This document shows, piece by piece, positions 1 to 61,221 of a stretch of DNA of 64,000 bases. The stretch covers positions 62,001 to 126,000 of IMG/VR virus record IMGVR_UViG_3300017917_000952; one strand, written 5' to 3'. The notes beneath the pieces were generated by a model, which did not search any database, had not been told where the DNA came from, and was given only the letters and a program-made list of their open reading frames with translations. Every line of letters begins with the position of its first letter. Positions within the stretch are counted from its first letter, which is position 1. The position numbers were made by a program, and so were the translations under genes.

Positions 1-330
1 AATATCAAAATCTACAATCTTATGAGGAATATTGTAGGCCTTACAAAATTCTCTAGCATAAACTATGTCGTGTTCATTAGTTCCAGCATTATGTCTGAGA
101 GTTAATGCTGTAAATTCTATACCTGCTTTAATAAAACTTCTAGCAGCAACTTCACCGTCTATCCCGCCGCTTAGACATAGGAATAAAGGCTTGTCAGTAA
201 GAGCTCTAATATTTTTTGCTGTTTGAATTAATTCACTTTTCCAATCTAACAGCGGGCGGCTTATGGGATTGAAATTTATCTTAAAGGTGCCGTCCTGGTT
301 AAGTAGATAAGTAAAGTTTACATTATTCAT
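1..330 (-). CDS. PP-loop (adenine nucleotide alpha-hydrolase) ATP pyrophosphatase-like protein, truncated at window edge
   Basis: Not in ORF track. Hand translation from CAT at 328-330 gives MNNVNFTYLLNQDGTFKINF...LFLCLSGGIDGEVAARSF...HDIVYAREFCKAYNIPHKIVDFDI, open to base 1. SGGxD PP-loop motif plus the typical downstream 'A..FC...IPH.IVD' segment. Confidence 0.7.
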   Translation of the reverse strand, partial: MNNVNFTYLLNQDGTFKINFNPISRPLLDWKSELIQTAKNIRALTDKPLFLCLSGGIDGEVAARSFIKAGIEFTALTLRHNAGTNEHDIVYAREFCKAYNIPHKIVDFDI

Positions 331-14312: not shown

Positions 14313-16985
14313 ATGAGTTACGTTGATGCCATATGGGATCGCGAGAAAGACATCATTCATGCTGTCGAGCGAGATCTTAAAAAGGGTAGACTTTATCAAA
14401 CATTCCCAGCCCGCTATCTGTTTTACTATCCAGATGCTAAGGGCAAATATAAATCAATCCACGGCGAAAGCCTATCAAAAGTTACTGCAAAGAATTGGAA
14501 AGAGTTCATTAAAGAACAAAAGATCCATAGCGGTTACAAACTATACGAAAGCGACATCAACCCTGTATTTCGCTGTCTCGAAGAAAACTATCTAGGTAAG
14601 GAACCTCCAAAACTGAATGTAGCGTTTTGGGATATTGAGGTGGACTTCGATCCAGAGCGCGGCTATGCATCGCCCGATGATGCATTTATGCCAATCACTG
14701 CGATTGCCGTTCACCTACAATGGTTAGATACATTAGTCTGTCTTGCTATTCCTCCAAAGACTCTAACAATGGAGCAGGCACAAGAACAGGTTAAAGACTT
14801 TCCTAACACGTTTCTGTTCGAAACAGAATACGAAATGTTAGACACTTTTCTTAACCTAATTGAGGATGCCGACATTCTAAGCGGCTGGAACAGTGAAGGT
14901 TTCGATATGCCGTACACGGTAAATAGAATTATAAAGGTTCTAAGTAAAGAAGATACACGCAGACTGTGCCTTTGGAACCAAATGCCCAAGAAGCGGGAGT
15001 ACGAAAAATATGGAAAAGCGGCTGTTACTTATGACCTGGTTGGTCGTGTTCATTTGGACAGTCTCGAGCTGTACCGCAAATACACATATGAAGAGCGTCA
15101 CACCTACAGACTGGACGCAATTGGGGAAATGGAGATAGGTGAATCAAAGACTGTCTATGAAGGCACACTTGATCAACTATACAATAATGATTTCCGCAAG
15201 TTTATTGAATACAACAGGCAAGACTGTGCGCTGTTAAACAAACTTGATAAGAAATTAAAATTCATTGACCTTGCAAACACCATTGCACATGAAAACACTG
15301 TGTTGCTACAGACTACAATGGGCGCTGTTGCTGTTACGGAACAGGCTATTGTAAATGAAGCACATCACAGAGGACTAATCGTTCCAAGTCGTCCACGTAG
15401 AGATGATACAGTTAATAGTGCGGCTGCTGGTGCGTATGTTGCATATCCTAAAAAAGGACTTCACGACTGGATTGGCTCTATGGACATTAACAGTCTGTAT
15501 CCATCTGTCATTCGTGCATTGAACATGGGTCCAGAAACTATTGTCGGACAGTTAAGGCCAGATTATACTAAAGCAGAAATTGAAGAAAAAACAACTGCTA
15601 AGGGATTAAGTTTTGCCGGCTCATGGGAAGGCAAGTTCGGTAGTAACGAATATGAATTTGTTATGGCACAGGACAAAGCCCACGATATTATCATTGACTG
15701 GGAGAATGGTAGCACTGATGTAATGAGTGGTGCCGAAATTTATAAACTAATATTCGAAAGCGGCAAGCCTTGGATGATAAGTGCGAACGGCACAATCTTT
15801 ACACATGAGCACGAAGGAGTTATTCCCGGATTGCTAAAGCGTTGGTACGCTGAACGTAAAGAAATGCAGGCCAAACTTAAAGAGGCAATTAAGGCCGAAA
15901 ATAAAATCGAAGAAGAATATTGGGACAAGCGTCAGTTGGTTAAAAAGATTAACTTAAACAGTCTGTACGGCGCTATTCTTAATGTGGGCTGTAGATTCTT
16001 TGATGATAGAATCGGACAATCAACTACATTAACAGGACGACAAATTGCACGTCATATGGCTGCAAAAATTAATGAAGTTGTAACAGGCGAGTATGATCAC
16101 GTAGGTAAAGCAATTATCTACGGTGATACAGACTCTGCTTATTTCAGCGCCTATAGCAGTCTTAAAAATGAAATTGCAAAAGGACAAATCCCTTGGGACA
16201 AAGATACCGTTATACAACTATATGACACTGTAGCCAACGAAGTTAACAGCACATTCCCGCAGTTCATGCTCGATGCTTTCCACTGCCCAAAGAGCCGTGG
16301 CGAAGTTATCAAAGCAGGTCGAGAAATTGTTGCTATCAAGGGTCTGTTTATTACTAAGAAACGTTATGCAGTTCTTGTATATGACAAAGAAGGTAAGCGT
16401 AAAGATAAAGACGGCAAGCCGGGAGAAATCAAGGCTATGGGTCTAGATCTGAAGCGTAGCGACACACCTGAATTTATGCAGGAATTCCTAACTGAGATCC
16501 TAACAAAGGTCCTAAATGGCAGCGAAGAAAAAGAAATTCTAGATAGAATTGTCGAGTTCAGAACCGAATTTAAGGCTCGACCTGGTTGGGAGAAAGGTAG
16601 TCCAAAACGTGCAAACAATATTACAGACTACGAGGAAAAAGAAAAGAAAGCAGGCAAGGCAAATATGCCCGGTCATGTCCGAGCAAGTATTAATTGGAAT
16701 ACTCTCCGCAGAATGAACGGTGACAAATACAGTATGCAAATTGTCGACGGTATGAAGGTTATCGTCTGCAAGTTAAAGTCCAATCCTCTAGGATTTACCA
16801 GTGTTGCATATCCTGTAGATGAACTACGTTTACCTAAGTGGTTTATGGAACTGCCGTTTGATCACGGAGAAATGGAAGCCACCATTATTAACAACAAGGT
16901 TGAAAACCTTATTGGTGTACTGGAATGGGATTTGAACAGTACACAAGAAACAAACACATTTGGTAGTTTATTCAGTTTTGAATAA
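14313..16985 (+). CDS. gp43: Family B DNA polymerase (T4 gp43-like)
   Basis: Exo DIEVD, WNSEGFD, YNRQD; Pol DINSLYPS, KKINLNSLYG, YGDTDS, KKRYA. Confidence 0.96.
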   Translation: MSYVDAIWDREKDIIHAVERDLKKGRLYQTFPARYLFYYPDAKGKYKSIHGESLSKVTAKNWKEFIKEQKIHSGYKLYESDINPVFRCLEENYLGKEPPKLNVAFWDIEVDFDPERGYASPDDAFMPITAIAVHLQWLDTLVCLAIPPKTLTMEQAQEQVKDFPNTFLFETEYEMLDTFLNLIEDADILSGWNSEGFDMPYTVNRIIKVLSKEDTRRLCLWNQMPKKREYEKYGKAAVTYDLVGRVHLDSLELYRKYTYEERHTYRLDAIGEMEIGESKTVYEGTLDQLYNNDFRKFIEYNRQDCALLNKLDKKLKFIDLANTIAHENTVLLQTTMGAVAVTEQAIVNEAHHRGLIVPSRPRRDDTVNSAAAGAYVAYPKKGLHDWIGSMDINSLYPSVIRALNMGPETIVGQLRPDYTKAEIEEKTTAKGLSFAGSWEGKFGSNEYEFVMAQDKAHDIIIDWENGSTDVMSGAEIYKLIFESGKPWMISANGTIFTHEHEGVIPGLLKRWYAERKEMQAKLKEAIKAENKIEEEYWDKRQLVKKINLNSLYGAILNVGCRFFDDRIGQSTTLTGRQIARHMAAKINEVVTGEYDHVGKAIIYGDTDSAYFSAYSSLKNEIAKGQIPWDKDTVIQLYDTVANEVNSTFPQFMLDAFHCPKSRGEVIKAGREIVAIKGLFITKKRYAVLVYDKEGKRKDKDGKPGEIKAMGLDLKRSDTPEFMQEFLTEILTKVLNGSEEKEILDRIVEFRTEFKARPGWEKGSPKRANNITDYEEKEKKAGKANMPGHVRASINWNTLRRMNGDKYSMQIVDGMKVIVCKLKSNPLGFTSVAYPVDELRLPKWFMELPFDHGEMEATIINNKVENLIGVLEWDLNSTQETNTFGSLFSFE

Positions 16986-16993
16986 AAAATCTG

Positions 16994-17022
16994 TTGACTT
17001 TTTACTACCGCCTAAATAAAAT
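16994..17022 (+). promoter_or_regulatory. sigma70-like promoter with overlapping CTAAATA late-type motif
   Basis: TTGACT-N17-TAAAAT; CTAAATA 17012-17018. Confidence 0.65.
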
Positions 17023-17041
17023 TAACAAAAGGATTATAATC

Positions 17042-17776
17042 ATGAAAGCAATCTTACAAGACATCGTCGCACATACAAACAAACTAGGGTTTTTAAATAT
17101 CGTTAAAGTAACAGGTACTAAAGATAAAACTCTAGTCGACAGTATGGCTGATGACCGTAGCGTTATTATGTACGCAGAAACAAAGGACCCACAGCCAAGT
17201 ATGCAGGGTGTGTTCGGTATGCCTCAACTCGAAAAACTTCGTTATCTTGTTGACGGTAAAGAATACCAAGACGATGCCAAGATCGAAGTTGTTACAGCAG
17301 ATCGAAACGGTGAGACTATTCCTGTAGGCTTACACTTTGAAAACAAAGACGGTGACTTCAAGAACGACTATCGTTTTATGAACACTGAGATTATTAACGA
17401 GAAACTTAAGACTGTTAAGTTCCGTGGTGTTAACTGGCATGTTGAAGTTGAACCTACGGTTAGTGCTATCCAGCGTTTCCAATTCCAAGCAGGTGCAAAT
17501 ACAGAACATACAACGTTCCTTGCAAAGACTGACGGAGATAAACTTGTGTTTGTTTTTGGTGATCAAAGCACTCACGGTGGCGAGTTTGTTTTTGCATCTG
17601 GCATTACTGGAAAGATCACAAAGGCATGGACATGGCCTGTTAACAGCGTTCTAAGTATTCTTAAGATCGCAGACGGTAACAATACTAAAATGAGTTTTAG
17701 TAACGACGGTGCTATGCAGATCGAATTAGACAGTGGCATTGCTACTTACAAATATATCATTCCTGCACAAGCATGA
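17042..17776 (+). CDS. Probable sliding clamp (gp45-like)
   Basis: 244 aa, alternating alpha/beta two-domain pattern, directly after polB; start MKAIL at 17042. Confidence 0.6.
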   Translation: MKAILQDIVAHTNKLGFLNIVKVTGTKDKTLVDSMADDRSVIMYAETKDPQPSMQGVFGMPQLEKLRYLVDGKEYQDDAKIEVVTADRNGETIPVGLHFENKDGDFKNDYRFMNTEIINEKLKTVKFRGVNWHVEVEPTVSAIQRFQFQAGANTEHTTFLAKTDGDKLVFVFGDQSTHGGEFVFASGITGKITKAWTWPVNSVLSILKIADGNNTKMSFSNDGAMQIELDSGIATYKYIIPAQA

Positions 17777-18126
17777 TCAATAACATATCAGGCATGAATA
17801 ATGTTGTCGTTATGAACGGCAACTCGTTCATGCCGTATGTAAACATGTCAAACCCTAGTGCTGGCATAGTCCGATACAATGGTAGTAACCAAAGTATGGA
17901 AGTGTATGACGGAAATAGTTGGTTGACTATGAATAATAATCATGTTAATATCGATCTGTCTGGTGCTGCTAATGCCGCCATTGCTTGGGCTATGAATAAG
18001 ATGGCAGAAGAAGCACAGTTAGAAAAGATGGCGGCAGAGCACCCTGCTGTAAAGGCAGCATATGAAAATATGAAACGTGCCGCAGAACAATTAAAAGCAA
18101 CAATAATATTGAGTAAAGATGAGTAA
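17773..18126 (+). CDS. Hypothetical protein
   Basis: 117-aa ORF with overlapping start/stop coupling. Confidence 0.65.
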   Translation: MINNISGMNNVVVMNGNSFMPYVNMSNPSAGIVRYNGSNQSMEVYDGNSWLTMNNNHVNIDLSGAANAAIAWAMNKMAEEAQLEKMAAEHPAVKAAYENMKRAAEQLKATIILSKDE

Positions 18127-19675
18127 CCCACCACGCAACCTAACACCGTTGCAGAAAGATTATGCTGTATATCTTCCTGCCATTAGTAGTTTCTACAGCA
18201 CCTATGTCGCAAAACAACGTCTAGAAGAATTTGTACCCAAGGATCGTATCCCTGCAGGATTTGATCGAGGAATTGAGGGTATGAACTTTCTTAACCCCGA
18301 ACAGGGCTACTTTACCTACAAGTATGCTCTATATTCTGCAGGTCACGCACAGTTAGATATTGTTAAGGCACAAACGCAAGAGTCAATGATCCAACAACGC
18401 GATAGAGGTAACTCTTTAATCTTAGGTGACTCCGGTGGGTATCAGATCGGTAAAGGCGTTCTTAAATTTGACTGGCTTAACTTTGAAGGCAAGGAAGCAA
18501 ACAAAACACGTCAACAGATTTTAGAATGGCTAGAAGCAACCGCCGATTGGTCAATGATGCTCGACGTTCCTACATGGGCCTGCGATCACATCCATAGTCC
18601 AAAGACTGGACTAAAAACATTTGACGATTGTCTAGACAAGACACGCTTCAATAACGATTACTTCCTTAAGAACCGCCTAGGTGCTACTAAGTGGCTTAAT
18701 GTTCTACAAGGCAGTGATTGGGATACTGCCGAAAAATGGTATAACGGTGTAAAAGAATTCAGCGATCCTAAAGGCAAGTATGCCGGTAAGGAAGCCGAAG
18801 GGTGGGCCTTCGGTGGTGCTAACATGTGTAAAATGGATATTACACTCAAGCGTCTAATGACCTTGCGTGAAGATGGTTTGCTGAAAGGCAAAAACTGGAT
18901 CCACTTCCTGGGTACAGCACAGTTAGATTGGTCGTGCTATCTAACGCAAATTCAACGTCAAATTAGGAAACACATCAATGAAGAAATTACCATATCTTTT
19001 GACTGCGCCTCACCGTTCATCGCAACAGCACACGGACTCGTCTACACAAACGCAGTCCACACGCCCAAAAGGTGGAGTGTTATTATGGACAAAGCCCCAG
19101 ATAACAAAGCACTTTCAGGAAGCGACATCCCGTTCCCATTCGAAAGCGAATTCGGTCGCAGGTTAACATTAGGTGATATCTGTTACTATGCTCCAGGTAT
19201 GCTTAACAAGATTGGCAAAGAAGGTAAAACTTCTTGGGATAGTTTTGCTTATGCACTTATGATGGGTCATAATGTCGAGTGTCATATTATTGCTGTACAA
19301 CGAGCACAGCAGTTAATGGACATTGAAGTTGCAAAGACCAAGGGTAAGATCAACTGGAAACACTGGAAGAAAGTAAAGTCCGGAGACATGAGTGACGAAT
19401 ACAGTGATTGGGTTCCTCGCAATATCCTATACTTCTCGAACTTTATCGAAGACCTGTTCAACACCAAAACAAAAGCAGAAGCATTTGAAATGATCGAGCA
19501 AGCAGGTCCTTTCTTACGCAGTCTAGAAGGTGCCCGACTGCAAGGTGGTCCTGCACAGAATACATTCGGTAACTTGTTTGAAATTGAAACGGTTACAGAT
19601 CAAAACGAAATCGATCTTGCTAACCCAGACGACGACGATCTAAGAGCGCTTGAAGAAGGTATTACAGGAGAATAA
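18119..19675 (+). CDS. dpdA: tRNA-guanine transglycosylase-fold protein, probable DNA 7-deazaguanine inserting enzyme (DpdA-like)
   Basis: TGT core motifs in order: GDSGGYQ, MLDVP, VLQG, AFGG, HFLG, SFDCASP, late HN; queE in same neighbourhood. Confidence 0.75.
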   Translation: MSNPPRNLTPLQKDYAVYLPAISSFYSTYVAKQRLEEFVPKDRIPAGFDRGIEGMNFLNPEQGYFTYKYALYSAGHAQLDIVKAQTQESMIQQRDRGNSLILGDSGGYQIGKGVLKFDWLNFEGKEANKTRQQILEWLEATADWSMMLDVPTWACDHIHSPKTGLKTFDDCLDKTRFNNDYFLKNRLGATKWLNVLQGSDWDTAEKWYNGVKEFSDPKGKYAGKEAEGWAFGGANMCKMDITLKRLMTLREDGLLKGKNWIHFLGTAQLDWSCYLTQIQRQIRKHINEEITISFDCASPFIATAHGLVYTNAVHTPKRWSVIMDKAPDNKALSGSDIPFPFESEFGRRLTLGDICYYAPGMLNKIGKEGKTSWDSFAYALMMGHNVECHIIAVQRAQQLMDIEVAKTKGKINWKHWKKVKSGDMSDEYSDWVPRNILYFSNFIEDLFNTKTKAEAFEMIEQAGPFLRSLEGARLQGGPAQNTFGNLFEIETVTDQNEIDLANPDDDDLRALEEGITGE

Positions 19676-20385: not shown

Positions 20386-20402
20386 TTTGGTAAAATTAGT
20401 AG

Positions 20403-20431
20403 TTGACTATTATCCAAAGTTTTGCTATATT
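20403..20431 (+). promoter_or_regulatory. sigma70-like promoter (extended -10)
   Basis: TTGACT-N17-TATATT with TGc. Confidence 0.65.
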
Positions 20432-20437
20432 AATAAT

Positions 20438-20962
20438 ATGAAACGTGATTACACTGATGGTAATTTAGATGATGTAAACTTCTTCTTTGGAGAAGAAGTT
20501 GAACACACACCGGCATATGGTATGGACACTCTATTCGTAGTCGGCGTCCAACCAATTGAAACTATTGAACATTACCTATCAGGTACTACATACCAAACAA
20601 AGCATATTTTCTTCGGGGCCAATCATAGTTTTAATCCAAAAGATAATCTCGATTGGCAACGTTGGGAATCTATGATTCAGCACTTTTTAGATAAAGATTA
20701 TCTATGCAGTCTCGACATTCCGATGAGTGCTGTTGAAGAATTTCACGAAGGTGGCCTTTGTGAATCGGATAACTTTATTCCCCAAATTCGTGTTCCTATT
20801 CCGTACATTCGTCTCTGGAATTATAACACAATGATTAAAATCGACGACAAAGACTTCAAAGCCACTAATCCCGGTGTATGGAGTCATAGTCTGCATAAAT
20901 TAATGGACCGAGAGTGCTTTACTGACTGGTCTAAATATAAAAACGATAAGGTAATGAAATGA
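20438..20962 (+). CDS. Hypothetical protein in deazaguanine neighbourhood
   Basis: Start MKRDY at 20438; EVEHTPA.G..TLFV, HIFFGANHSF, alpha/beta pattern. Confidence 0.7.
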   Translation: MKRDYTDGNLDDVNFFFGEEVEHTPAYGMDTLFVVGVQPIETIEHYLSGTTYQTKHIFFGANHSFNPKDNLDWQRWESMIQHFLDKDYLCSLDIPMSAVEEFHEGGLCESDNFIPQIRVPIPYIRLWNYNTMIKIDDKDFKATNPGVWSHSLHKLMDRECFTDWSKYKNDKVMK

Positions 20963-21135
20963 TTAATTCAAAAATTGTCAAGGGTGTTCCTAAAGAAGAT
21001 GCCCAAGAAAAACTGTTTAAGTTGCTCGAAAGTATTGACTGGAAGTTGTGGGAAATGTATAATATGATGAAAGACAATCTTCCTGCAAAAAACGAAACTG
21101 CTTCTAAAACAAAAAAGAAGGCCGAAAATGAGTGA
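20959..21135 (+). CDS. Small hypothetical protein (58 aa, not in ORF track)
   Basis: Hand translation MINSKIVKGVPKEDAQEKLFKLLESIDWKLWEMYNMMKDNLPAKNETASKTKKKAENE*; fills the gap exactly and overlaps both neighbours. Confidence 0.6.
   Translation: MINSKIVKGVPKEDAQEKLFKLLESIDWKLWEMYNMMKDNLPAKNETASKTKKKAENE
21035..21063 (+). promoter_or_regulatory. sigma70-like promoter internal to small ORF
   Basis: TTGACT-N17-TATAAT. Confidence 0.55.
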
Positions 21136-21511
21136 ACGCAATATGATCTGGGTTACTTTTCGCAAGGAAGGTATTCACATGTACCCAGCGGCTGCAACAG
21201 ATCCTAATCTTAAAACAGGTGACGAATATGACGTTAGTTTCCTCGGTACTCCACATCGTCATATCTTCCATTTCAAAGTCTATATTCAAGTATTTCACGA
21301 TGATCGTGATATTGAGTTTATTCAGTTTAAGCGTTGGCTAGAGAAGTGCTATAGCGACGGCACACTCGAGCTCAACCACAAATCCTGCGAGATGATTGCA
21401 CGAGAACTTCATGCAACTATCAAGGCAAGATATCCAGGTCGTAAGATTTGGATTGACGTAAGTGAAGACGGCGAAAATGGCTGCTTCATTAAATTTCCAT
21501 CAACCCTTTAA
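21128..21511 (+). CDS. T-fold QueD-like protein with LxxxHRHxF motif (DpdL-like candidate)
   Basis: EGIH..., FLGTPHRHIFHF, DIEFI, SCEMIA, VSED; His-rich metal site typical of PTPS/QueD fold. Confidence 0.65.
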   Translation: MSERNMIWVTFRKEGIHMYPAAATDPNLKTGDEYDVSFLGTPHRHIFHFKVYIQVFHDDRDIEFIQFKRWLEKCYSDGTLELNHKSCEMIARELHATIKARYPGRKIWIDVSEDGENGCFIKFPSTL

Positions 21512-21525
21512 TTAGGAAACACAAC

Positions 21526-21777
21526 ATGTCGATTCCGGCATACATTCAAAAAACTCTCGTTATGAAGCCCGAAGTTACCAAGATCTTTGATGACCTCGAA
21601 AAATGGCACGATCACTGCCGCTTTGAATTGATCAACTTTGATCCTAAGGACCTGTACCGGTCCAAGGAATATAAGGATTGGTCTCGAGGCTTTGAAAAGA
21701 AGCCATGGAATGGCGAGCGTAAGCCATACCAAGGTAAGAATCCGAGATATTCGAATGGCGAACGTTTTTCTCGTTGA
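21526..21777 (+). CDS. Hypothetical protein
   Basis: 83-aa ORF with AGGA SD. Confidence 0.6.
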   Translation: MSIPAYIQKTLVMKPEVTKIFDDLEKWHDHCRFELINFDPKDLYRSKEYKDWSRGFEKKPWNGERKPYQGKNPRYSNGERFSR

Positions 21778-22819
21778 TCTAGAAAGCGTAGAAACAAGGT
21801 ACACGGGTCAATGGAAGGCCCATGTACCTTCCTTACTACGAAAGGCAGGACATAATGTTCAAGTTATTTCGGGACCTACTGATATTCCTGCATCAACTAC
21901 CCCAGGCGCTTTTCTTAACTTTGGCGGAACGAATATCTACAAAGCATCCCAAGTGGAGCAGATGGGTCGTTTATTCTGCGCCGGAACTGTCAGCCCTGGC
22001 GATCATTTTCTTTTTACTGATGCTTGGCATCCTGGTATCATTAATCTTCGATATATGAGCGAGCTTCTTAACATTCCTGTTAAGATTCACGCATTATGGC
22101 ATGCTGGTAGTTACGACCCCCAAGACTTCTTAGGACGTCTTATCGGAGATGCTCCGTGGGTTAGACACGCTGAGAAAAGTTTTTATCATGCGATTGACCA
22201 TAACTATTTTGCTACGCAGTTTCATATAAAACTATTCTGCGAAACTCTATTAGGTTTTACTCCTGCTGAAAAACTGTACGACACTAAAATTGTACGCACA
22301 GGCTGGCCAATGGAATATATGGTTGATACTCTTACTCCATATAAAGGTATGGACAAGAGAAATCTTATTTTGTTTCCGCATAGACTGGCTCCAGAGAAGC
22401 AGGTGGAAATTTTTAGAGATTTGAAAGAACACTTACCTCAATATGAATTTGTTATTTGTCAAGAACAAGAATTGACAAAGAATGAATATCATAATTTGCT
22501 AGGAGAAGCAAAGATGGTGTTTAGCGCCAACTTACAAGAGACACTTGGTATTAGTTGGTATGAAGGCGCTATCGTTGATGCTATTCCTATGATGCCAGAC
22601 AGACTAAGTTACAGTGAAATGGCCTATGCTACATTTAAGTATCCTAGTGAATGGACTGAGTCATACACAGCGTACACAGAGCACCGTCAAGAGTTATGTG
22701 CTAAAATAATTCAATACATGGACAATTACGAAAAGTTCTTGCCTACGTTGAGAAAACAGACACAAGACTTAACAACAAACTTTTTTAGTGCAAATGGTTT
22801 ACTGGAGAACATTAAATGA
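21755..22819 (+). CDS. GT-B (family 4/Glycos_transf_1-like) glycosyltransferase
   Basis: Start MANVF at 21755; FPHRLAPEK and E-x7-E motif ETLGISWYE; PDRLSYSEM. Confidence 0.8.
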   Translation: MANVFLVDLESVETRYTGQWKAHVPSLLRKAGHNVQVISGPTDIPASTTPGAFLNFGGTNIYKASQVEQMGRLFCAGTVSPGDHFLFTDAWHPGIINLRYMSELLNIPVKIHALWHAGSYDPQDFLGRLIGDAPWVRHAEKSFYHAIDHNYFATQFHIKLFCETLLGFTPAEKLYDTKIVRTGWPMEYMVDTLTPYKGMDKRNLILFPHRLAPEKQVEIFRDLKEHLPQYEFVICQEQELTKNEYHNLLGEAKMVFSANLQETLGISWYEGAIVDAIPMMPDRLSYSEMAYATFKYPSEWTESYTAYTEHRQELCAKIIQYMDNYEKFLPTLRKQTQDLTTNFFSANGLLENIK

Positions 22820-23280
22820 AATGGTTTCTTAAAATTCTAGAACGACTAGGTCGTAAACGTATTGTAATGGACAGGATTAACAATGAGCCTTATCTCGAAC
22901 GCTACTACCTCTTTCTTAAAGATAGAAAGCATTTCCCCTTCAATGTGTTTCTTCACCGTTTCCTTAAATCAGATCCCGATGATGTGCATGATCATCCATG
23001 GGGTTACGCAACGCTTATCTTAAAAGGCGGCTACTATGAATGGGTGGGCAAGTTTAACTCCAACGGCGAAAAGATTGGTGAAGTTAGAATGTGGCGTGGC
23101 CCTGGCCATTTCCGTGTATGTAGTGCTACTTCTTACCATCGTATTGAACTTGACCCAGGGGTAGACTGCTGGACTTTGTTCATGCCCGGTCCTCAGAAGA
23201 GAGAATGGGGATTCTGGTATAAGGGTGCTTGGATGCACAATGACCAATACCTTAAAGGTCGGTCAGAGGGAACTTTGTAA
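22816..23280 (+). CDS. Cupin-fold protein
   Basis: HDHPW...GGYYE...YHRIEL...WTLFMPG metal-binding cupin pattern. Confidence 0.7.
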   Translation: MKWFLKILERLGRKRIVMDRINNEPYLERYYLFLKDRKHFPFNVFLHRFLKSDPDDVHDHPWGYATLILKGGYYEWVGKFNSNGEKIGEVRMWRGPGHFRVCSATSYHRIELDPGVDCWTLFMPGPQKREWGFWYKGAWMHNDQYLKGRSEGTL

Positions 23281-24289
23281 TTTTTTGATCGTCCTCATCA
23301 ATGCAAGACCTCATTCCGCACTTTTGAGGTCCTTGCGGAGGCATCCACCCGGGGTGCCAAATATTGCCTAGTGCAATGTTGTTACAGTTACTTCCGCTTA
23401 CCCATCCCTGAGCACCTATAACTAGTTTCTCAACTCCTGCGTTACACAACTGCCCGGTGAAACTAGGATGCTTGTTATACGTTTCCTCATATCGTTCTTG
23501 CCATGTAGTCTCTTGAAAATATATTTTTTCTTCGACTAGAGGACTTTTTTCAATTATAGGCGGTGGAGGGGGCGGGGGTGGCGGAGCAACTACTGGAGGT
23601 GCTTCAGCAAGGCGGCGGCGCATTTCTTCTTCTCTGCGTTTCTGTTCTTCTAAGCGTCTTGCTCTTTCTATTAAAACTTGTTCCCTATGCTCTTTGGTAA
23701 GATTAAAAAAATCAATCTTTTGCAGTTCTTCAAAAGAATACTTTAACATTCCTGCGGACGGATCTGCATTAAAATATAATTGTGTTTTAGTTATAACTAT
23801 ACCAAGTTCTTCTTCTAGTTCAAGAACTCTATTAATATCTTCTTCAACGTGTGTGTTTCTTATCGGTGCAGTAATTGAAATCTTTTTGTTTTTTGATTTA
23901 AAAGTATCAAATATATATTTGATTAAAGAGGGGCTTTGCCAAAAATGAAATGTTAGAATTAGATTATCAACATGAGGTTCTATAGCCCACCAATCCATCC
24001 ATAATCTGCCGCCGCTAGTATGTAAGGTAATGCTATCACTATTTGCTCTGCATAGTTTGAGTAATTGGGGCATATAGTCCATATCCAGTGGCTCGCCTCC
24101 ATTAAATATCCAATCAATGCTTCTGTTTTGCTTTATCTTGTAAGAATCGATTAGCAGTTGGGCAATTCTAAGATACTCGTTTATGTCTTGAGGAACTGGA
24201 CCCCCTCGAGAGCTCGTTGGACAATATTCACATTGGGCCTTACAATAGTCGTTTAAGGTCCAGGAAATAATGGTTTTTAAATTATCCAT
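23252..24289 (-). CDS. Radical SAM protein with C-terminal Cys-containing (twitch/SPASM-like) domain
   Basis: YCKAQCEYC (CxxxCxxC), NGGEP, TSG, C-terminal CNAG...C...CGMRSC; internal coiled coil and poly-Pro. Confidence 0.8.
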   Translation of the reverse strand: MDNLKTIISWTLNDYCKAQCEYCPTSSRGGPVPQDINEYLRIAQLLIDSYKIKQNRSIDWIFNGGEPLDMDYMPQLLKLCRANSDSITLHTSGGRLWMDWWAIEPHVDNLILTFHFWQSPSLIKYIFDTFKSKNKKISITAPIRNTHVEEDINRVLELEEELGIVITKTQLYFNADPSAGMLKYSFEELQKIDFFNLTKEHREQVLIERARRLEEQKRREEEMRRRLAEAPPVVAPPPPPPPPPIIEKSPLVEEKIYFQETTWQERYEETYNKHPSFTGQLCNAGVEKLVIGAQGWVSGSNCNNIALGNIWHPGWMPPQGPQKCGMRSCIDEDDQKITKFPLTDL

Positions 24290-24296
24290 AATATAG

Positions 24297-24325
24297 TTGA
24301 CAGGTCTAAATACACTCTGTATAAT
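24297..24325 (+). promoter_or_regulatory. Consensus sigma70-like promoter
   Basis: TTGACA-N17-TATAAT. Confidence 0.8.
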
Positions 24326-24350
24326 GTACTTATCTTATCAAGGCTATAAA

Positions 24351-24638
24351 ATGCAGGCTAACCCAAATAGATACCAAGAAGCATTAGACATTCTGCAGGA
24401 AGAATGCGGAGAAGTAATTGTAGAAGTTAGCAAGTGTCGCAGGTTTGGTCTAAATACAACACATTACAAAACAGGCCTAGAGCATAACAAAATGCTCGAA
24501 ATTGAAATAGGTGATGTGTTAGCAATGATTGATATCTTAGAAGAACAGGGTATCATAGACCACACTGCGTTAATGCACGCCAAGTCAAAGAAAAAAGAAA
24601 AACTTAAACAATGGTCAAAAATATATGAGCAAAATTAA
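24351..24638 (+). CDS. MazG-like all-alpha NTP pyrophosphohydrolase
   Basis: LQEECGEV...EIEIGDVLAMI (EExxE...ExxD); start at 24351. Confidence 0.7.
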   Translation: MQANPNRYQEALDILQEECGEVIVEVSKCRRFGLNTTHYKTGLEHNKMLEIEIGDVLAMIDILEEQGIIDHTALMHAKSKKKEKLKQWSKIYEQN

Positions 24639-25479
24639 AGTCGCAGAATTATTCTATTCTATTCAAGGCGAAGGACGCTATATGGGTGTTCCTTCTGTCT
24701 TTCTTCGCACCTTTGGGTGTAATTTTAAATGCCAAGGGTTTGGCATGCCACGAGGAGAACTAAGCAATGAGGCAGAAAATATTGACGCTACTAAGTACAC
24801 CGAGTACAAATCGCTTCCTTTGGTTTCTACAGGTTGTGACAGTTACGCTAGTTGGGATCCTCGCTTTAAGCATCTATCCCCTCTTCTGGATACTTCTGCG
24901 ATTGCCGACGCTATTGTGGATACGTTACCGCACAAGGAATGGCGGGACGAACATCTCGTAATTACAGGTGGTGAGCCTTTGCTAGGTTGGCAGAAGCAGT
25001 ATCCTGATTTACTCGATCATCCTAAGATGCGTAGTTTGAGAGAAATTACATTTGAGACAAACGGTACAATGCGCCTAACGCCTGCATTCACAGAATATCT
25101 AAAAAACTGGCAATGGAGTCACGAAAAGAACCTTACAAGAGAAATTACATTTAGTGTCAGTGCTAAACTTCCTGTAAGTGGCGAACCGTGGAAGGATGCT
25201 ATCAAACCGGCCGTGGTTAAATCTTATCAAGACATTGGTGCCAACGTCTATCTTAAGTTTGTGATTACCAACGAAGAAGATTTAAAGGACGCTGAACGAG
25301 CAGTCGAAGAATTTAGGGCAGGTGGGTTTACTGGACACGTATACCTTATGCCTGTTGGCGGTGTAGAGTCTGTGTATGCACTAAACAATAGGAACGTAGC
25401 AGACATTGCCATGCGTAAAGGTTGGAGATATTCAGATCGACTTCAAGTGCCACTGTTTAAAAACGAGTGGGGCACCTAA
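24625..25479 (+). CDS. queE: 7-carboxy-7-deazaguanine synthase (radical SAM)
   Basis: ELFYSIQGEG...GVPSVFLRTFGCNFKC...CDS, ITGGEP, ETNGT, SVSAK, LKFV, RLQV. Confidence 0.85.
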   Translation: MSKIKVAELFYSIQGEGRYMGVPSVFLRTFGCNFKCQGFGMPRGELSNEAENIDATKYTEYKSLPLVSTGCDSYASWDPRFKHLSPLLDTSAIADAIVDTLPHKEWRDEHLVITGGEPLLGWQKQYPDLLDHPKMRSLREITFETNGTMRLTPAFTEYLKNWQWSHEKNLTREITFSVSAKLPVSGEPWKDAIKPAVVKSYQDIGANVYLKFVITNEEDLKDAERAVEEFRAGGFTGHVYLMPVGGVESVYALNNRNVADIAMRKGWRYSDRLQVPLFKNEWGT

Positions 25480-25694: not shown

Positions 25695-26124
25695 GAAAAT
25701 TTTCGGTATTGATAAAATAAAGGCACAGACCGAAGCAAGTATTAAGGCAGCAGAAGAAGCCAAACGTATTGCAGAAGAAGCCACTGCGGCTGCTGAACGT
25801 GCTAAAGAAGCAGAACGTTTGGCAAAATTAAGTCCAAAAGAATTGGCTACAGAAAAGAAAGAGCCGTGGATCGCTGTTTTGGAAACTCATGTAAACAAAG
25901 AAAATGTTCGTAATGGTTTTTTCGAACTTGACTGGAATGAGTATTTTGTGTTACAATTACGTAGTGCTGGATATACTGGCGCTACAGATGAAGAAATTGT
26001 TGATCAATGGTTCAATGAACTTTGTCGTAACGTTGGTGCCGACGAGGGCATTGATATGAGCCGACGCGGCGCAGGCTATGTAAATCGCGCCCTACGTGAT
26101 GATGGACGAACTGAGGTCAGTTAA
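25678..26124 (+). CDS. Hypothetical protein
   Basis: Start MKKIV at 25678; coiled coil then EPWIAV...FFELDWN. Confidence 0.65.
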   Translation: MKKIVEKIFGIDKIKAQTEASIKAAEEAKRIAEEATAAAERAKEAERLAKLSPKELATEKKEPWIAVLETHVNKENVRNGFFELDWNEYFVLQLRSAGYTGATDEEIVDQWFNELCRNVGADEGIDMSRRGAGYVNRALRDDGRTEVS

Positions 26125-27116
26125 TGAACAAAACTTATATTCTGGTAGATACCGCTAATACTTTTTTCCGTGCTCGACACGTTATCCGTGGTTCACTAGA
26201 AGATAAAGTTGGTATGAGCATTCATACCACTTTGGGCAGTATTCGCAAGGCATGGCGTGACTTTAACGGCGATCACATTGTATTCTGCCTCGAAGGTCGC
26301 AGTTGGCGCAAGGATCATTACGCTCCGTACAAGCGCAACCGCTCCGACGCTCGGGCCGCGCTCAGCCCTCGCGAGGCTGAAGAAGATCGTGTGTTTTGGG
26401 AAACATTCGATCAGTTTAAAGACTTCATAATCAATAAGACAAACTGCACAGTTCTGCATCATCAACAACTAGAAGCAGACGACCTTATTGCAGGGTTTAT
26501 TCAAAGTCATCCTAATGATAATCATGTCATCATTAGTACAGATGGAGACTTTGCACAACTGATTGCACCCAATGTCAAACAGTACAACGGTGTAATGGAA
26601 GTCACAACTACTCACGAAGGATACTTTGATGCCAAAGGTAAACCTGTTGTTGATAAGAAAACTGGTGAAGCAAAAGGCGCACCGGACCCAAAATGGCTAC
26701 TCTTTGAGAAGTGTATGCGTGGCGACACCTCCGACAACATCTTTAGTGCATATCCGGGAGTACGTGAGAAAGGCACAAAGAATAAGGTTGGTCTCCGTGA
26801 AGCGTTTGCAGATCGCGATAGTAAAGGTTGGGCGTGGAACAATCTGATGCTTCAGCGTTGGATGGATCACGAAGGTGTCGAACATCGTGTGCTTGACGAT
26901 TATAACCGTAATGTTACTCTTTGTGACCTGACTGCACAACCCGAAGAGATTAAATACATTATTAAAGAAACAATTGAAAAAGCAACAACAGCAGAAAAGA
27001 ATATTCCGCAAGTTGGAATCAGACTTATGAAATTCTGCGCGGAATACGATCTGCAGAAAATTAGCGAACAGGTACAGAGCTATGCAGAACCACTCAATGC
27101 AAGGTACACGGCATAA
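26124..27116 (+). CDS. rnh: T4 RNase H / 5'-3' exonuclease (FEN1 fold)
   Basis: LVDTAN, EADDLIA, ISTDGDFAQL, GDTSDNI. Confidence 0.88.
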   Translation: MNKTYILVDTANTFFRARHVIRGSLEDKVGMSIHTTLGSIRKAWRDFNGDHIVFCLEGRSWRKDHYAPYKRNRSDARAALSPREAEEDRVFWETFDQFKDFIINKTNCTVLHHQQLEADDLIAGFIQSHPNDNHVIISTDGDFAQLIAPNVKQYNGVMEVTTTHEGYFDAKGKPVVDKKTGEAKGAPDPKWLLFEKCMRGDTSDNIFSAYPGVREKGTKNKVGLREAFADRDSKGWAWNNLMLQRWMDHEGVEHRVLDDYNRNVTLCDLTAQPEEIKYIIKETIEKATTAEKNIPQVGIRLMKFCAEYDLQKISEQVQSYAEPLNARYTA

Positions 27117-31643: not shown

Positions 31644-32297
31644 ATGAAACACGTTGGTAAAATGAAAAATAACGGCGCAAGAGTTGCCGTTGCATATCGC
31701 ACGTTGCCCGGCGATTCAGGTAGTGCCCTGGTTATCGGCACAGGCAACTTGCCAGATGCTTGGCACGATACTCTAATGAGTGTTATTCAAGATCCGAGCG
31801 GTCAACAGGCTAACGAACTTGCAGACATTTTAAGTGTTCGTAAGTTCCCTGATGGACGTAACATTCTAGAAGCACTACACGTAGGTGGCTTCTTGAAAAA
31901 AGTACCAACTAGTTTAGTTCTTATGACTCCTACTGGTAACCCAAATGTTACTGTACCATTGAGCGAACTGAATCAACTTATTGCCGAACAAAAGGGCATT
32001 AGTGTTGATGACTTGGCTGTCAAGGACGGCAACCTAAATGCGTCTCCAAAGACCAACAAGCAAGTTGAAGAAGCATTAGAATCAAAAGATCCTGTAGTTT
32101 CTACAAGAGACGATGCAACCAGAACAACTTCGAGTTCGGTTAACTATGAAGAGCCAGTTAGCCAGGCCAACTTGAGTCCTGCAGAACTTCGTAGTAAAGC
32201 AGATGCACTATATAAAGAGGCTGCACGCCTTCGTAAAGAAGCCGATGCAATGGATCCTCCTAAAAGCAAGAAGAAAGATACTGTTGCAGTAGAATGA
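31644..32297 (+). CDS. Hypothetical protein
   Basis: 217-aa ORF, GGAGG SD. Confidence 0.7.
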   Translation: MKHVGKMKNNGARVAVAYRTLPGDSGSALVIGTGNLPDAWHDTLMSVIQDPSGQQANELADILSVRKFPDGRNILEALHVGGFLKKVPTSLVLMTPTGNPNVTVPLSELNQLIAEQKGISVDDLAVKDGNLNASPKTNKQVEEALESKDPVVSTRDDATRTTSSSVNYEEPVSQANLSPAELRSKADALYKEAARLRKEADAMDPPKSKKKDTVAVE

Positions 32298-32770
32298 TCA
32301 ACTGTATTGTTGCAGTAGAAAAGAACCAGGGCATTGGATTTGAAGGTCAGATGCCCTGGCCTCACCTTAAAGGTGATATGTCTTGGTTCAAAAGGATGAC
32401 GACTGGACAGGTTGTTATAATGGGTGCAACAACTTTTGATAGTTTAGGGAAACCCCTACCTAACAGAATAAATGTAGTCATTAGTAGAAAACGCCTATTA
32501 GGGGATCATACATTTGATGATTGTGGTGCGGCATTAGATTATTGTTCTGTAGAATATCCTGATAAAGAAATTTTTATTATCGGCGGAAGTGCCATTTATC
32601 AACATTACTTACATATTGTTGATAGATTTTACGTAACCGAAATAGATGCAGATTTTAAATGCGATAAATTCTTTGATCTAGATTACGTTCGAGAAAACTT
32701 TACAAAAGTTACAGAACATGCTAAATTTACAGACCCGATACCCTATGTAATAAAGGAATATAATATATGA
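32294..32770 (+). CDS. folA: Dihydrofolate reductase
   Basis: GIG..GQMPWPHLKGD..WFK, IMGATT, PLPNRINVVIS, IIGGS. Confidence 0.93.
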   Translation: MINCIVAVEKNQGIGFEGQMPWPHLKGDMSWFKRMTTGQVVIMGATTFDSLGKPLPNRINVVISRKRLLGDHTFDDCGAALDYCSVEYPDKEIFIIGGSAIYQHYLHIVDRFYVTEIDADFKCDKFFDLDYVRENFTKVTEHAKFTDPIPYVIKEYNI

Positions 32771-33651
32771 CACACCCAGATAGAGTTTACCTAGATGCTC
32801 TACAAAATATTTTAGACAACGGCGAAGACCGGCCAGACAGAACAGGAGTAGGGACTAAAGGAATCTTTGGTATGCAAATGCGATTCAATTTGCAAGACGG
32901 GTTCCCTGCTCTTACAACTAAAAAATTAGCATGGAAGGCTGTGGTCAGTGAACTGCTTTGGTTTATTGAAGGCAGCGGTGACGAACGTAGACTAGCAGAA
33001 ATTTTACACGGCTCAAGGACTACTGATAAGACAACCATATGGACTGCGAATGCCAGTGCTGACTATTGGGCAAACAAAAGGTTGCGTAGACATCCTGCAG
33101 ACCTCGGTAGAGTATACGGTGTACAATGGAGGCGTTGGCGTAAACCTTTAATTCGAATTAACAAAGTTGTTCTACAAAATCACGATCAGTTAATGGAATT
33201 AATCAGCGGTATCAAAGCAGATCCATATAGCCGTAGACATATTATTACTGCATGGAATCCCGGAGAACTAGAGCTCATGGCCTTGCCTCCTTGCCATATG
33301 ATGGCACAGTTCTATGTTAATAATGGAAAGTTAAGTTGCCAGATGTATCAGCGTAGTGCCGATATGTTCTTAGGAGTACCATTTAATATTGCATCGTATG
33401 CCTTGTTTACACATATGATTGCACAGGTCTGTGATCTAGATGTGGGCGAATTAATTATCACTATTGGTGATGCTCACATTTACCAAAATCACTTTGATCA
33501 AGTACGTGAGCAATTAGGAAGGGAGCCATTACAGTTGCCTACACTTAAACTAAATCCCTCTATTAAGGACATTACAAAGTTCACAATGGAAGATATCGAG
33601 CTAGTCGGTTATACAAGCCACGATGCAATTAAAGCACCGATGGCTGTTTAA
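32767..33651 (+). CDS. thyA: Thymidylate synthase
   Basis: DRTGVGT, ELLWF, YGVQWR, SRRHI, MALPPCH, YQRSADMFLGVPFNIASY, GDAHIY. Confidence 0.97.
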   Translation: MTHPDRVYLDALQNILDNGEDRPDRTGVGTKGIFGMQMRFNLQDGFPALTTKKLAWKAVVSELLWFIEGSGDERRLAEILHGSRTTDKTTIWTANASADYWANKRLRRHPADLGRVYGVQWRRWRKPLIRINKVVLQNHDQLMELISGIKADPYSRRHIITAWNPGELELMALPPCHMMAQFYVNNGKLSCQMYQRSADMFLGVPFNIASYALFTHMIAQVCDLDVGELIITIGDAHIYQNHFDQVREQLGREPLQLPTLKLNPSIKDITKFTMEDIELVGYTSHDAIKAPMAV

Positions 33652-53282: not shown

Positions 53283-53289
53283 TATTTAT
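53283..53289 (-). promoter_or_regulatory. T4-late-like promoter motif ATAAATA
   Basis: Upstream of gp25-like gene. Confidence 0.55.
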
Positions 53290-55559: not shown

Positions 55560-55562
55560 GTT

Positions 55563-61172: not shown

Positions 61173-61197
61173 CTTTGCCCGTTCTGATCGCTACACT
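61169..61197 (+). promoter_or_regulatory. sigma70-like promoter
   Basis: TTGACT-N17-TACACT; AGGAG SD downstream. Confidence 0.6.
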
Positions 61198-61221
61198 GTT
61201 TAAGTTAGGAGAATTATAATA

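What the first reader, a model, noticed from the sequence alone, without database searches (positions are those of the whole stretch)
21128..21511. T-fold protein with LxxxHRHxF and no folE, canonical queD or queC in the window
Seen: FLGTPHRHIFHF. As I recall, this motif was proposed as the signature of DpdL (CDG decarboxylase giving unsubstituted 7-deazaguanine). No GTP cyclohydrolase I or QueC is recognisable in 64 kb. Inference: either this protein is the QueD step and the host or another locus supplies the rest, or it is DpdL. DpdL would yield a base with no 7-substituent to glycosylate, so the two hypotheses make different predictions.
Basis: partly seen in the sequence, partly recalled or inferred. 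Interest (0 to 1): 0.6.

Follow-up and report, generated by a model that had tools for sequence, protein, structure and literature searches.

The report
DpdL-type deazaguanine gene, sugar-transferase linked
This small gene is a phage copy of DpdL, a QueD-like enzyme proposed but never shown to make bare 7-deazaguanine for phage DNA, and across many phages it sits next to a sugar-transferase gene that the current DpdL model does not explain.

Summary
Window 21128-21511(+) encodes a 127-aa protein with FLGTPHRHIFHF. It folds confidently (pLDDT 95) as a T-fold, and its nearest solved structures are PTPS and E. coli QueD.

It is not the QueD step. Leu replaces the catalytic Cys, and no QueD/PTPS model matches it. 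The same 206.8-kb viral contig has its own FolE and a Cys-bearing QueD, 41 and 29 kb upstream of the window.

It is an orthologue of the published DpdL: 59.5% identical to the Acidovorax phage ACP17 protein and 35% to Cellulophaga phage phiST CGPG_00067.

It lies in a 7-deazaguanine cassette within the replication module:
- a distant DpdA/TGT-like transglycosylase (18119-19675)
- a MazG-like gene (24297-24638)
- QueE (24625-25479)

No QueC was found in the 206.8 kb held, but the contig is only about 58% complete.

The most likely role is the proposed decarboxylation of 7-carboxy-7-deazaguanine (CDG). That activity has never been shown.

One point is new and unexplained. A family-1 glycosyltransferase (21755-22819) accompanies DpdL in eight lineages, including PA5oct, whose G is known to be modified. 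Other DpdL genes are fused to LmbE-like deacetylase domains. phiST, the only phage with measured dDG, lacks this transferase. The end product here may therefore not be bare dDG.

The parts
21128..21511 (+). DpdL orthologue: 127-aa Zn-type T-fold protein with L39-x3-H43-R-H45-x-F47. Also conserved are H17, H57, R60, E63, S86-C87-E88 and E113.
18119..19675 (+). DpdA/TGT-like DNA transglycosylase candidate, 518 aa. It has the motifs GDSGGYQ (D104), MLD149, HFLG and SFD295CAS.
   Evidence: hhalign to the ACP17/XanX1-type DpdA gives 95.3%, E 2.2e-8. It is 41.6% identical to PA5oct EST35_0316. The Vibrio phage 2.275.O homologue lies beside QueF, a YhhQ-like transporter and a 'queuosine biosynthesis' gene. 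The ESM Atlas gives a TGT lead at 0.94. There is no direct Pfam TGT hit.
20438..20962 (+). 174-aa protein of unknown function (the ORF opens at 20387; homologues start at M18). It is conserved between DpdA and DpdL in this lineage and next to DpdA in ACP17.
   Evidence: It is fused to DpdL in one metagenomic protein, P0290. The model has pLDDT 78.5, and its best named matches are QueE, at noise level. hhalign to QueE is negative.
21755..22819 (+). Family-1 (GT-B, GT4-like) glycosyltransferase homologue, 354 aa. The listed ORF opens at a TTG at 21638; homologues align from about residue 42 of that ORF.
   Evidence: It is 52% identical to Phosso 'glycosyltransferase', 45% to PA5oct EST35_0317 and 36% to ACP17 ASD50404. 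The XanX1, L122 and L123 homologues hit PF00534. The profile gives weak hits to GT-B structures in the PDB. The ESM Atlas scores 1.00 to viral GT family 1 clusters. Co-occurrence with DpdL in phage records is shown.
22816..23280 (+). Cupin-like 154-aa protein, conserved inside the cassette in all four close relatives examined. Its role is unknown.
   Evidence: phrog_4786 'cysteine dioxygenase', E 1.9e-38; synteny
24297..24638 (+). MazG-like nucleotide pyrophosphohydrolase candidate, 113 aa, overlapping the QueE start.
   Evidence: PF03819 scores 21.9 bits against a cut-off of 22, E 2e-4. It is conserved in relatives. No BLAST similarity to the phiST MazG-like protein was found.
24625..25479 (+). 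QueE-like radical-SAM 7-carboxy-7-deazaguanine synthase, 284 aa.
   Evidence: The five best NCBIfam hits are all QueE models (E 2e-16 to 1.5e-10), each below its equivalog cut-off. It is 34% identical over 262 aa to the PA5oct '7-carboxy-7-deazaguanine synthase'. The N-terminal QGEG motif matches ACP17 QueE.

Best explanation
The protein is the DpdL of an abundant, uncultivated PA5oct-like jumbo phage. It is a QueD-derived T-fold enzyme that keeps the three His that bind zinc in QueD (H17, H43, H45) and the Glu that anchors the pterin or purine ring (E113). It has lost QueD's catalytic Cys (Leu39) and gained its own conserved set (H57, R60, E63, S86-C87-E88).

The inferred pathway runs as follows. 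The phage's own FolE and QueD (elsewhere on the contig) and QueE (3 kb downstream) make 7-carboxy-7-deazaguanine. DpdL then removes or reworks the carboxyl group, and the published proposal is decarboxylation to 7-deazaguanine. The neighbouring DpdA-like transglycosylase exchanges the product for guanine in phage DNA, which protects it from restriction. The MazG-like gene here, and the GMP reductase placed next to FolE, fit a lowering of the normal guanine nucleotide pool.

Shown here: family membership, fold, conserved residues, gene context and co-occurrence. Inferred: the substrate, the chemistry, and the final base in DNA.

My odds: DpdL-family member 0.95; part of a 7-deazaguanine DNA-modification pathway 0.85; CDG (or CPH4) decarboxylase with bare dDG as the final base in this phage about 0.4.
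For: Homology to the named DpdL proteins:
- tblastn gives 59.5% identity (E 1e-38) to ACP17 ASD50405 and 35% (E 1e-8) to phiST CGPG_00067.
- These are the two dpdL genes used in PMC10516641, which defines the LxxxHRHxF motif.

Motif, fold and family size:
- Motif and other conserved residues.
- Model pLDDT 95.2, with top structural matches PTPS and QueD.
- The family has 2019 representatives at 50% clustering with E<=1e-3.

Context in this genome:
- FolE and QueD are on the same contig.
- QueE is in the window.
- A DpdA-like gene lies 1.4 kb upstream.
- No QueC was found in the 206.8 kb.

Context elsewhere:
- DpdL lies near QueE in all 10 phage neighbourhoods compared, and near FolE in 8 of them.
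- PA5oct carries the same cassette. Its DNA resists G-containing restriction sites and is attacked by nucleases that sense modified G (PMC12191111).
- Fusions of DpdL to a YhhQ/Vut_1-type transporter domain (a family known, from my own knowledge, for queuosine-precursor uptake) and to dUTPase/DCD fit a role on a free deazapurine feeding DNA.
Against: - The decarboxylase activity is only a published proposal. The authors report that dpdL plus dpdA from phiST and from ACP17 gave no dDG in E. coli.
- No Pfam or NCBIfam model recognises the protein. hhalign to the phage QueDs reaches only 85% and covers only the C-terminal half.
- The contig is about 58% complete, so the absence of QueC is not proven. 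One close relative, G002, has a QueC-like gene (44.8 bits) in a region with no counterpart here.
- The tight link to a glycosyltransferase, and the LmbE-like fusions, are not predicted by a pathway that ends in an unsubstituted 7-deazaguanine.
Confidence: 0.6

Rival explanations
1. It is a DpdL-family protein, but in the glycosyltransferase-linked cassette type its job is not simply to make bare 7-deazaguanine. It would create or handle an intermediate that is then joined to a sugar or amino sugar. The DNA of this phage, and of PA5oct, ACP17 and Xanthomonas X1, would then carry a glycosylated 7-deazaguanine derivative.
For: - A PF00534-type GT lies next to DpdL or DpdA in ACP17, XanX1, Synechococcus BUCT-ZZ01, PA5oct, Phosso, the window lineage, and metagenome contigs L122 and L123.
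- In Phosso the GT stays beside DpdL although the DpdA-like gene is 170 kb away.
- Among 50,697 phage records, 22 have a GT homologue and 17 of those are among the 28 records with DpdL.
- Seven DpdL representatives are fused to an LmbE/PIG-L-like domain. From my own knowledge, GT4 plus LmbE is the usual GlcNAc-transfer and de-N-acetylation pair (MshA/MshB, BshA/BshB).
- phiST, the only DpdL phage with dDG measured, has no such GT.
- ThyA in the window is canonical, so no hydroxymethyl-pyrimidine acceptor is apparent.
Against: - No chemistry is known that places a sugar acceptor on 7-deazaguanine by way of a T-fold enzyme.
- The GT could act on another base, on a protein, or on the host envelope.
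- The co-occurrence counts include closely related records; only about 5-8 lineages are independent.
- The LmbE-like domain could be a plain amidase, for example converting ADG to CDG.
- No mass data exist for any phage of this type.
Confidence: 0.3
2. It is the phage's QueD (CPH4 synthase) in a divergent form, and the host or another locus supplies the other steps.
For: It has the same T-fold as QueD, with E. coli QueD among the best structural matches. The three His that bind zinc in QueD are kept.
Against: - The catalytic Cys of CxxxHGH is Leu in at least 90% of 82 homologues. According to PMC10516641, QueD is inactive without that Cys.
- No PF01242 or TIGR03367 match exists.
- A separate QueD with Cys34, His38 and the Asp-His pair lies on the same contig, and one accompanies DpdL in ACP17, phiST, RHph_I1_18 and BUCT-ZZ01.
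Confidence: 0.03
3. It is a T-fold protein that acts on host pterin, folate or tRNA-queuosine metabolism, or has no catalytic role, and has nothing to do with phage DNA.
For: T-fold enzymes are common in pterin metabolism. Some DpdL homologues sit alone among nucleotide-metabolism genes with no visible cassette (L126, L127).
Against: It sits in the replication module between DNA polymerase/clamp and RNase H, beside a DpdA-like gene and QueE. DpdL lies near QueE in all 10 phage neighbourhoods compared. dDG was measured in phiST, and modified G was shown in PA5oct.
Confidence: 0.07

Closest known systems
DpdL of Cellulophaga phage phiST (CGPG_00067) and of Acidovorax phage ACP17 (ASD50405), proposed CDG decarboxylase (Nucleic Acids Res 2023, PMC10516641)
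   Same: Same family (35% and 59.5% identity), same LxxxHRHxF motif, same length. Same partners: FolE, QueD, QueE and a DpdA, with no QueC found.
   Different: phiST has a small (259-aa) DpdA3, a dUTPase/MazG-like neighbour and no glycosyltransferase. Here the DpdA-like protein is 518 aa, a family-1 glycosyltransferase and a 174-aa unknown protein are in the cassette, and FolE and QueD lie 30-40 kb away.
E. coli QueD (PDB 4NTK/4NTM) and PTPS (2DJ6)
   Same: T-fold with TM 0.65-0.73. The three His are at the start of strand 2 and the end of strand 1, and there is a C-terminal Glu.
   Different: About 18% identity. The catalytic Cys is replaced by Leu. No Pfam PTPS hit. It has its own conserved H57, R60, E63 and S-C-E 86-88.
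PA5oct (Wroclawvirus) locus EST35_0316 to EST35_0322
   Same: Same gene set in similar order: clamp-like homologue (annotated 'structural protein' in PA5oct), DpdA-like, GT, DpdL, QueE, RNase H. Identities are 42%, 45%, 53% and 34% for DpdA-like, GT, DpdL and QueE. PA5oct DNA has a modified G.
   Different: PA5oct places the GT before DpdL and has a phosphoribosyltransferase (EST35_0321, PF00156) that this contig lacks, although two close relatives have one. PA5oct shows no detectable homologue of the 174-aa and cupin-like genes in the 16-kb region compared.
GT4 plus LmbE pairs of mycothiol, bacillithiol and GPI synthesis (own knowledge)
   Same: A family-1/GT4-like transferase is found together with an LmbE/PIG-L-like domain in XanX1-type DpdL cassettes and fusions.
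   Different: No LmbE-like gene was detected in this window, and neither acceptor nor sugar is known.

Membership tests
DpdL (PMC10516641) | Sequence homology to phiST CGPG_00067 and ACP17 DpdL | tested here: met
   E 1e-8 (35% identity) and E 1e-38 (59.5% identity); the hits fall exactly on those CDSs
DpdL (PMC10516641) | LxxxHRHxF in place of QueD's CxxxHGH | tested here: met
   L39, H43, R44, H45 and F47 are present. They are conserved in 82 homologues. R44 is F in PA5oct and Aeromonas phage Ahp1.
DpdL (PMC10516641) | QueD-like T-fold | tested here: met
   pLDDT 95.2; PTPS and QueD are the top PDB matches
DpdL (PMC10516641) | Phage also encodes FolE, QueD, QueE and a DpdA | tested here: met
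   FolE 129 bits and PTPS 57 bits on the same contig. QueE-like gene in the window. DpdA-like by profile comparison at 95.3%.
DpdL (PMC10516641) | No QueC in the phage | tested here: inconclusive
   None passes the cut-off in 206.8 kb, but the contig is about 58% complete and relative G002 has a QueC-like gene
DpdL (PMC10516641) | Converts CDG to 7-deazaguanine; dDG present in virion DNA | not testable with these tools
   Not demonstrated for any DpdL; the published heterologous test was negative
QueD / CPH4 synthase | Match to PF01242 or TIGR03367 | tested here: not met
   No hit at E<=0.1
QueD / CPH4 synthase | Catalytic Cys of CxxxHGH | tested here: not met
   Leu39
DpdA / TGT superfamily (for the 518-aa neighbour) | TGT-type motifs with the two catalytic Asp (DSGGxQ and xFDC); motif identity is from my own knowledge of TGT | tested here: met
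   D104 in GDSGGYQ and D295 in SFDCAS are invariant in 6 homologues and aligned to the ACP17-type DpdA
DpdA / TGT superfamily (for the 518-aa neighbour) | Direct match to Pfam TGT (PF01702) or to a solved TGT | tested here: not met
   No hit. The ACP17, XanX1 and phiST DpdA proteins also fail this test by hmmscan.
Glycosyltransferase family 1 (PF00534) (for 21755-22819) | Match to PF00534 or homology to members that match it | tested here: met
   The protein's own six-frame hit is only 12.5 bits. Homologues XanX1 (45.5 bits), L122 and L123 pass the threshold. ESM Atlas score 1.00.

The most novel reading that the evidence does not exclude
DpdL genes come in two cassette types. In the type found here, DpdL is coupled to a family-1 glycosyltransferase, and in some lineages also to LmbE-like, PAPS-reductase-like and phosphoribosyltransferase genes. 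Phages of this type, including this abundant jumbo-phage lineage and the therapy candidate PA5oct, would carry a so far undescribed sugar-bearing 7-deazaguanine in their DNA. The true chemistry of DpdL would then differ from, or go beyond, CDG decarboxylation.
Probability: 0.3. Interest if true: 0.8.

Novelty: new variant of a known kind. Interest (0 to 1): 0.55.

Why it matters
DpdL is the one step of the phage 7-deazaguanine pathways that is named but has not been shown to work.

This window shows three things. The family is large: 2019 sequence clusters. It is carried by a very abundant uncultivated jumbo-phage lineage, with more than 8000 90%-identity protein clusters matching (at least 84% identity among the 120 listed). 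And it is coupled to genes that the published model does not use.

The coupling suggests why the two-gene reconstitution failed, since partners may have been missing. It also points to cultivable phages (PA5oct, ACP17, Xanthomonas X1) in which one mass-spectrometry run could settle whether a new glycosylated deazapurine exists.

This bears on restriction evasion, on sequencing artefacts in jumbo phages, and on the use of PA5oct-like phages in therapy.

Tried and rejected
- Pfam, NCBIfam and PDB sequence searches with the single protein, and a PDB search with a 10-sequence profile, gave nothing useful.
- hhalign of DpdL against five phage QueDs aligned only the C-terminal half, at 85%.
- megablast of the locus against phage records found no match.
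- The N-terminal extension of the Chryseobacterium phage MA9V-3 CDS that contains DpdL is not MazG-like. I dropped the MazG-fusion idea.
- The window's MazG-like ORF shows no BLAST similarity to the phiST MazG-like protein.
- 174-aa neighbour, sequence level: no Pfam, PHROG or NCBIfam hit. hhalign was negative against QueE, phiST-type DpdA3, the LmbE-like domain, PA5oct EST35_0320, the Phosso 'glycosylase', phiST CGPG_00066 and XanX1 WEM34305.
- 174-aa neighbour, structure level: Foldseek found nothing at E<=0.001. The QueE resemblance (VIA Z 6.3; Atlas TM 0.59) is within the noise range that the tool itself states.
- Complex prediction of the 174-aa protein with DpdL gave no answer, meaning no support and no evidence against.
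- Neither the neighbour of the DpdA-like gene in Vibrio phage 2.275.O nor the one in Phosso is GT-like.
- Several look-ups of diverse DpdL representatives landed on contigs too short to show context.
- A hydroxymethyl-pyrimidine route for the glycosyltransferase was considered, but the only ThyA-family gene scores as canonical thymidylate synthase.

Full report
**The observation**

Window 21128-21511(+) is an ATG-started ORF of 127 aa. Its start overlaps the stop of a 58-aa upstream ORF by 8 nt. Residues 38-49 read FLGTPHRHIFHF. The window is bases 62001-126000 of a 206,751-bp IMG/VR viral contig that CheckV rates about 58% complete.

Six-frame Pfam searches of the whole contig place the only GTP cyclohydrolase I hit at 20398-20907 (129 bits). 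The only PTPS/QueD hit is at 32316-32726 (57 bits). Both lie outside the window. No QueC hit passes the cut-off. The two weak hits are tandem 290-aa PP-loop ATPases at 60581-62330. The statement about the window is therefore correct.

**What the protein is**

Pfam and NCBIfam give nothing, and PHROGs gives only an unnamed family, phrog_17812 (E 1.6e-36). tblastn against 50,697 phage records finds 28 records. Fetching the loci shows that two hits fall exactly on ACP17 ASD50405 (59.5% identity) and phiST CGPG_00067 (35%).

These are the two genes that Cui, Hutinet and co-workers named DpdL. They proposed it as a 7-carboxy-7-deazaguanine (CDG) decarboxylase and defined LxxxHRHxF as replacing QueD's CxxxHGH (PMC10516641).

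A search of 1.84 billion cluster representatives finds 2019 relatives at E<=1e-3 and 515 at E<=1e-10. In an alignment of 82 full-length representatives:
- H45 and E88 are invariant.
- G15, H17, L39, H43, R44, F47, R60, E63, F64, S86, C87 and E113 are at least 90% conserved.
- R44 is Phe in PA5oct and Aeromonas phage Ahp1, so the motif is better written LxxxHxHxF.

AlphaFold2 on that alignment gives pLDDT 95.2 and a beta-beta-alpha-alpha-beta-beta T-fold. Foldseek ranks PTPS 2dj6 and E. coli QueD 4ntk/4ntm first (E 3e-5 to 1e-4, TM about 0.7, 18% identity).

By position, H17, H43 and H45 correspond to the three zinc ligands of QueD. By the hhalign register, E113 corresponds to the ring-anchoring Glu. 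This is an inference from the alignment and from published QueD structures.

**Why it is not QueD**

- The catalytic Cys is Leu39.
- No QueD model matches it.
- The contig has a separate 168-aa QueD with Cys34, His38 and the Asp-His pair. That QueD is 52% identical to the ACP17 QueD, and its best PDB match is QueD2 7v0f.

**The surroundings**

The gene lies in the replication module. BLAST against PA5oct, Phosso, ACP17 and four close relatives from IMG/VR shows a conserved order:

| Window coordinates | Gene |
|---|---|
| 14313-16985 | DNA polymerase |
| 16994-17776 | sliding clamp |
| 18119-19675 | 518-aa DpdA-like protein |
| 20438-20962 | 174-aa protein, unknown function |
| 21128-21511 | DpdL |
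| 21755-22819 | glycosyltransferase-like protein |
| 22816-23280 | cupin-like protein |
| 24297-24638 | MazG-like protein |
| 24625-25479 | QueE |
| 26124-27116 | RNase H |

*The 518-aa protein.* It has no Pfam TGT hit. Several lines still point to a DpdA:
- It carries GDSGGYQ and SFDCAS.
- Its family profile matches the ACP17/XanX1/BUCT-ZZ01 DpdA family at 95.3% (E 2.2e-8) with these motifs in register. The XanX1 member is annotated queuine tRNA-ribosyltransferase.
- Its homologue in Vibrio phage 2.275.O lies beside QueF, a YhhQ-like transporter and another queuosine gene.
- The ESM Atlas gives a TGT lead at 0.94.

*QueE.* The five best NCBIfam hits are all QueE models. The protein is 34% identical to PA5oct's annotated CDG synthase.

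All the genes that define a DpdL phage in the paper are therefore present: FolE, QueD, QueE and a DpdA. Only the absence of QueC remains unproven, because the contig is incomplete and one relative (G002) has a QueC-like gene in a region with no counterpart here.

**Independent experimental support**

PA5oct carries the same cassette. [quoted passage not shown] The chemical nature of that base has not been reported in the library searched.

**What does not fit the simple model**

The 354-aa protein downstream of DpdL is a family-1 glycosyltransferase homologue:
- 52% identical to Phosso 'glycosyltransferase', 45% to PA5oct EST35_0317 and 36% to ACP17 ASD50404.
- More distant homologues in XanX1 and in metagenome contigs L122 and L123 pass PF00534.
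- One PA5oct-like record annotates it as GT family 4.
- The Atlas score is 1.00 to viral GT1 clusters.

It lies next to DpdL or DpdA in eight lineages (and those above). In Phosso it stays with DpdL while the DpdA-like gene is about 170 kb away. Of 22 phage records with a homologue at E<=1e-5, 17 are among the 28 records with DpdL.

The DpdL phages without this transferase are phiST and its relatives, Chryseobacterium MA9V-3, RHph_I1_18, Ahp1, and contigs L124 and L136. These have a small phiST-type DpdA3 and a dUTPase/DCD or MazG-like gene instead.

There are thus two cassette types. The only one with a measured product (dDG in phiST) is the type that this window does not belong to.

Several DpdL representatives are fusion proteins:
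- seven carry an N-terminal LmbE/PIG-L-like domain (AHxDDE ... HxxH), homologous to XanX1 WEM34304
- one carries a PAPS-reductase-like domain
- one carries a YhhQ/Vut_1 transporter domain
- one carries a dUTPase/DCD domain

GT4 plus LmbE is the usual pair for adding GlcNAc and then exposing its amine (own knowledge). The ThyA in the window is canonical (365.7 bits against a cut-off of 327), so no hydroxymethyl-pyrimidine acceptor is in sight.

**Mechanism: what I commit to**

Most likely, the protein is the zinc-dependent T-fold enzyme that takes the carboxylated intermediate made by FolE, QueD and QueE, and removes or reworks the carboxyl group. The DpdA-like enzyme then puts the product into phage DNA. 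I rate the published activity with bare dDG as end product at about 0.4 for this phage.

T-fold enzymes natively bind pterins, so decarboxylation of CPH4 before QueE is a variant I cannot separate from decarboxylation of CDG. I rate at about 0.3 that the glycosyltransferase-linked type ends in a sugar-bearing deazaguanine and that DpdL's chemistry differs accordingly.

The negative two-gene reconstitution in the paper is compatible with missing partners. The candidates seen here are the glycosyltransferase and the 174-aa protein.

The 174-aa protein is conserved with ACP17 ASD50402 and is fused to DpdL once, on a single short contig. Its model (pLDDT 78.5) resembles QueE only at noise level and has no Fe-S cysteines. 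I treat that resemblance as a lead only.

**Novelty and score**

The gene itself is a new member of a named but biochemically unproven family. The cassette is a variant that the held literature does not describe: a large DpdA-like protein, the glycosyltransferase, the 174-aa protein, and FolE and QueD dispersed elsewhere.

The lineage is very abundant in metagenomes. More than 8000 90%-identity protein clusters matched DpdL, with at least 84% identity among the 120 listed, on contigs up to about 390 kb.

Interest is 0.55. The finding as written is largely explained, but it exposes a testable gap in the DpdL model.

Noticed in passing
window 23252-24289 (-): A 345-aa radical-SAM-like ORF with a run of about nine prolines in a linker. 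It is on the opposite strand inside the cassette. It is present in relative L025 but not in L080, L066 or L014, so it is a variable insert.
   Followed up: partly
window 22816-23280 (+): A cupin-like 154-aa protein (phrog_4786 'cysteine dioxygenase', E 1.9e-38). It is conserved in all four close relatives between the glycosyltransferase and QueE. No homologue was found in the ACP17, PA5oct or Phosso neighbourhoods.
   Followed up: partly
contig 20934-21953 (outside the window, about 40 kb upstream): A GMP reductase (555 bits) lies directly after FolE. This would drain the guanine nucleotide pool and fits replacement of G.
   Followed up: no
contig 60581-62330 (-); the second gene ends in window 1-330: Two tandem 290-aa PP-loop ATPase paralogues with weak similarity to asparagine synthase, MnmA and QueC. 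They could activate a carboxylate as QueC does.
   Followed up: partly
contig 32259-32765 and alignment A3: All five phage QueDs that accompany DpdL (this contig, ACP17, phiST, RHph_I1_18, BUCT-ZZ01) read C-x3-H-G-Y instead of C-x3-H-G-H. DpdL keeps all three His.
   Followed up: no
contig 32762-33717 (outside the window): A small cupin and a class II aldolase/adducin-like protein follow QueD directly.
   Followed up: no
L114 (G004 69304-69810) and L115 (G001 245174-245653): Two close relatives carry a phosphoribosyltransferase (PF00156) between the glycosyltransferase and QueE. PA5oct EST35_0321 and Synechococcus phage BUCT-ZZ01 UTS52039 do as well. This hints that the free deazapurine may also be turned into a nucleotide. 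The contig studied here has none.
   Followed up: partly
L116:1180-1800 (relative G002): A 206-aa QueC-like gene (PF06508, 44.8 bits) sits in a region with no counterpart in the contig studied. The lineage is therefore not uniformly QueC-free.
   Followed up: partly
proteins P0259, P0277, P0280, P0331, P0368, P0384, P0390; locus L122: These are LmbE/PIG-L-like-domain fusions to DpdL. On L122 the fusion lies between a PAPS-reductase-like gene and a PF00534 glycosyltransferase, with FolE and an ACP17-type DpdA upstream.
   Followed up: yes
window 32767-33651 (+): Canonical thymidylate synthase ThyA, 365.7 bits, above the equivalog cut-off.
   Followed up: yes
window 37491-49352 (-), 49356-52793 (-), 53286-58973 (-): Very long minus-strand ORFs (3953, 1145, 757 and 1136 aa), presumably virion or injected proteins. 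They were not examined.
   Followed up: no
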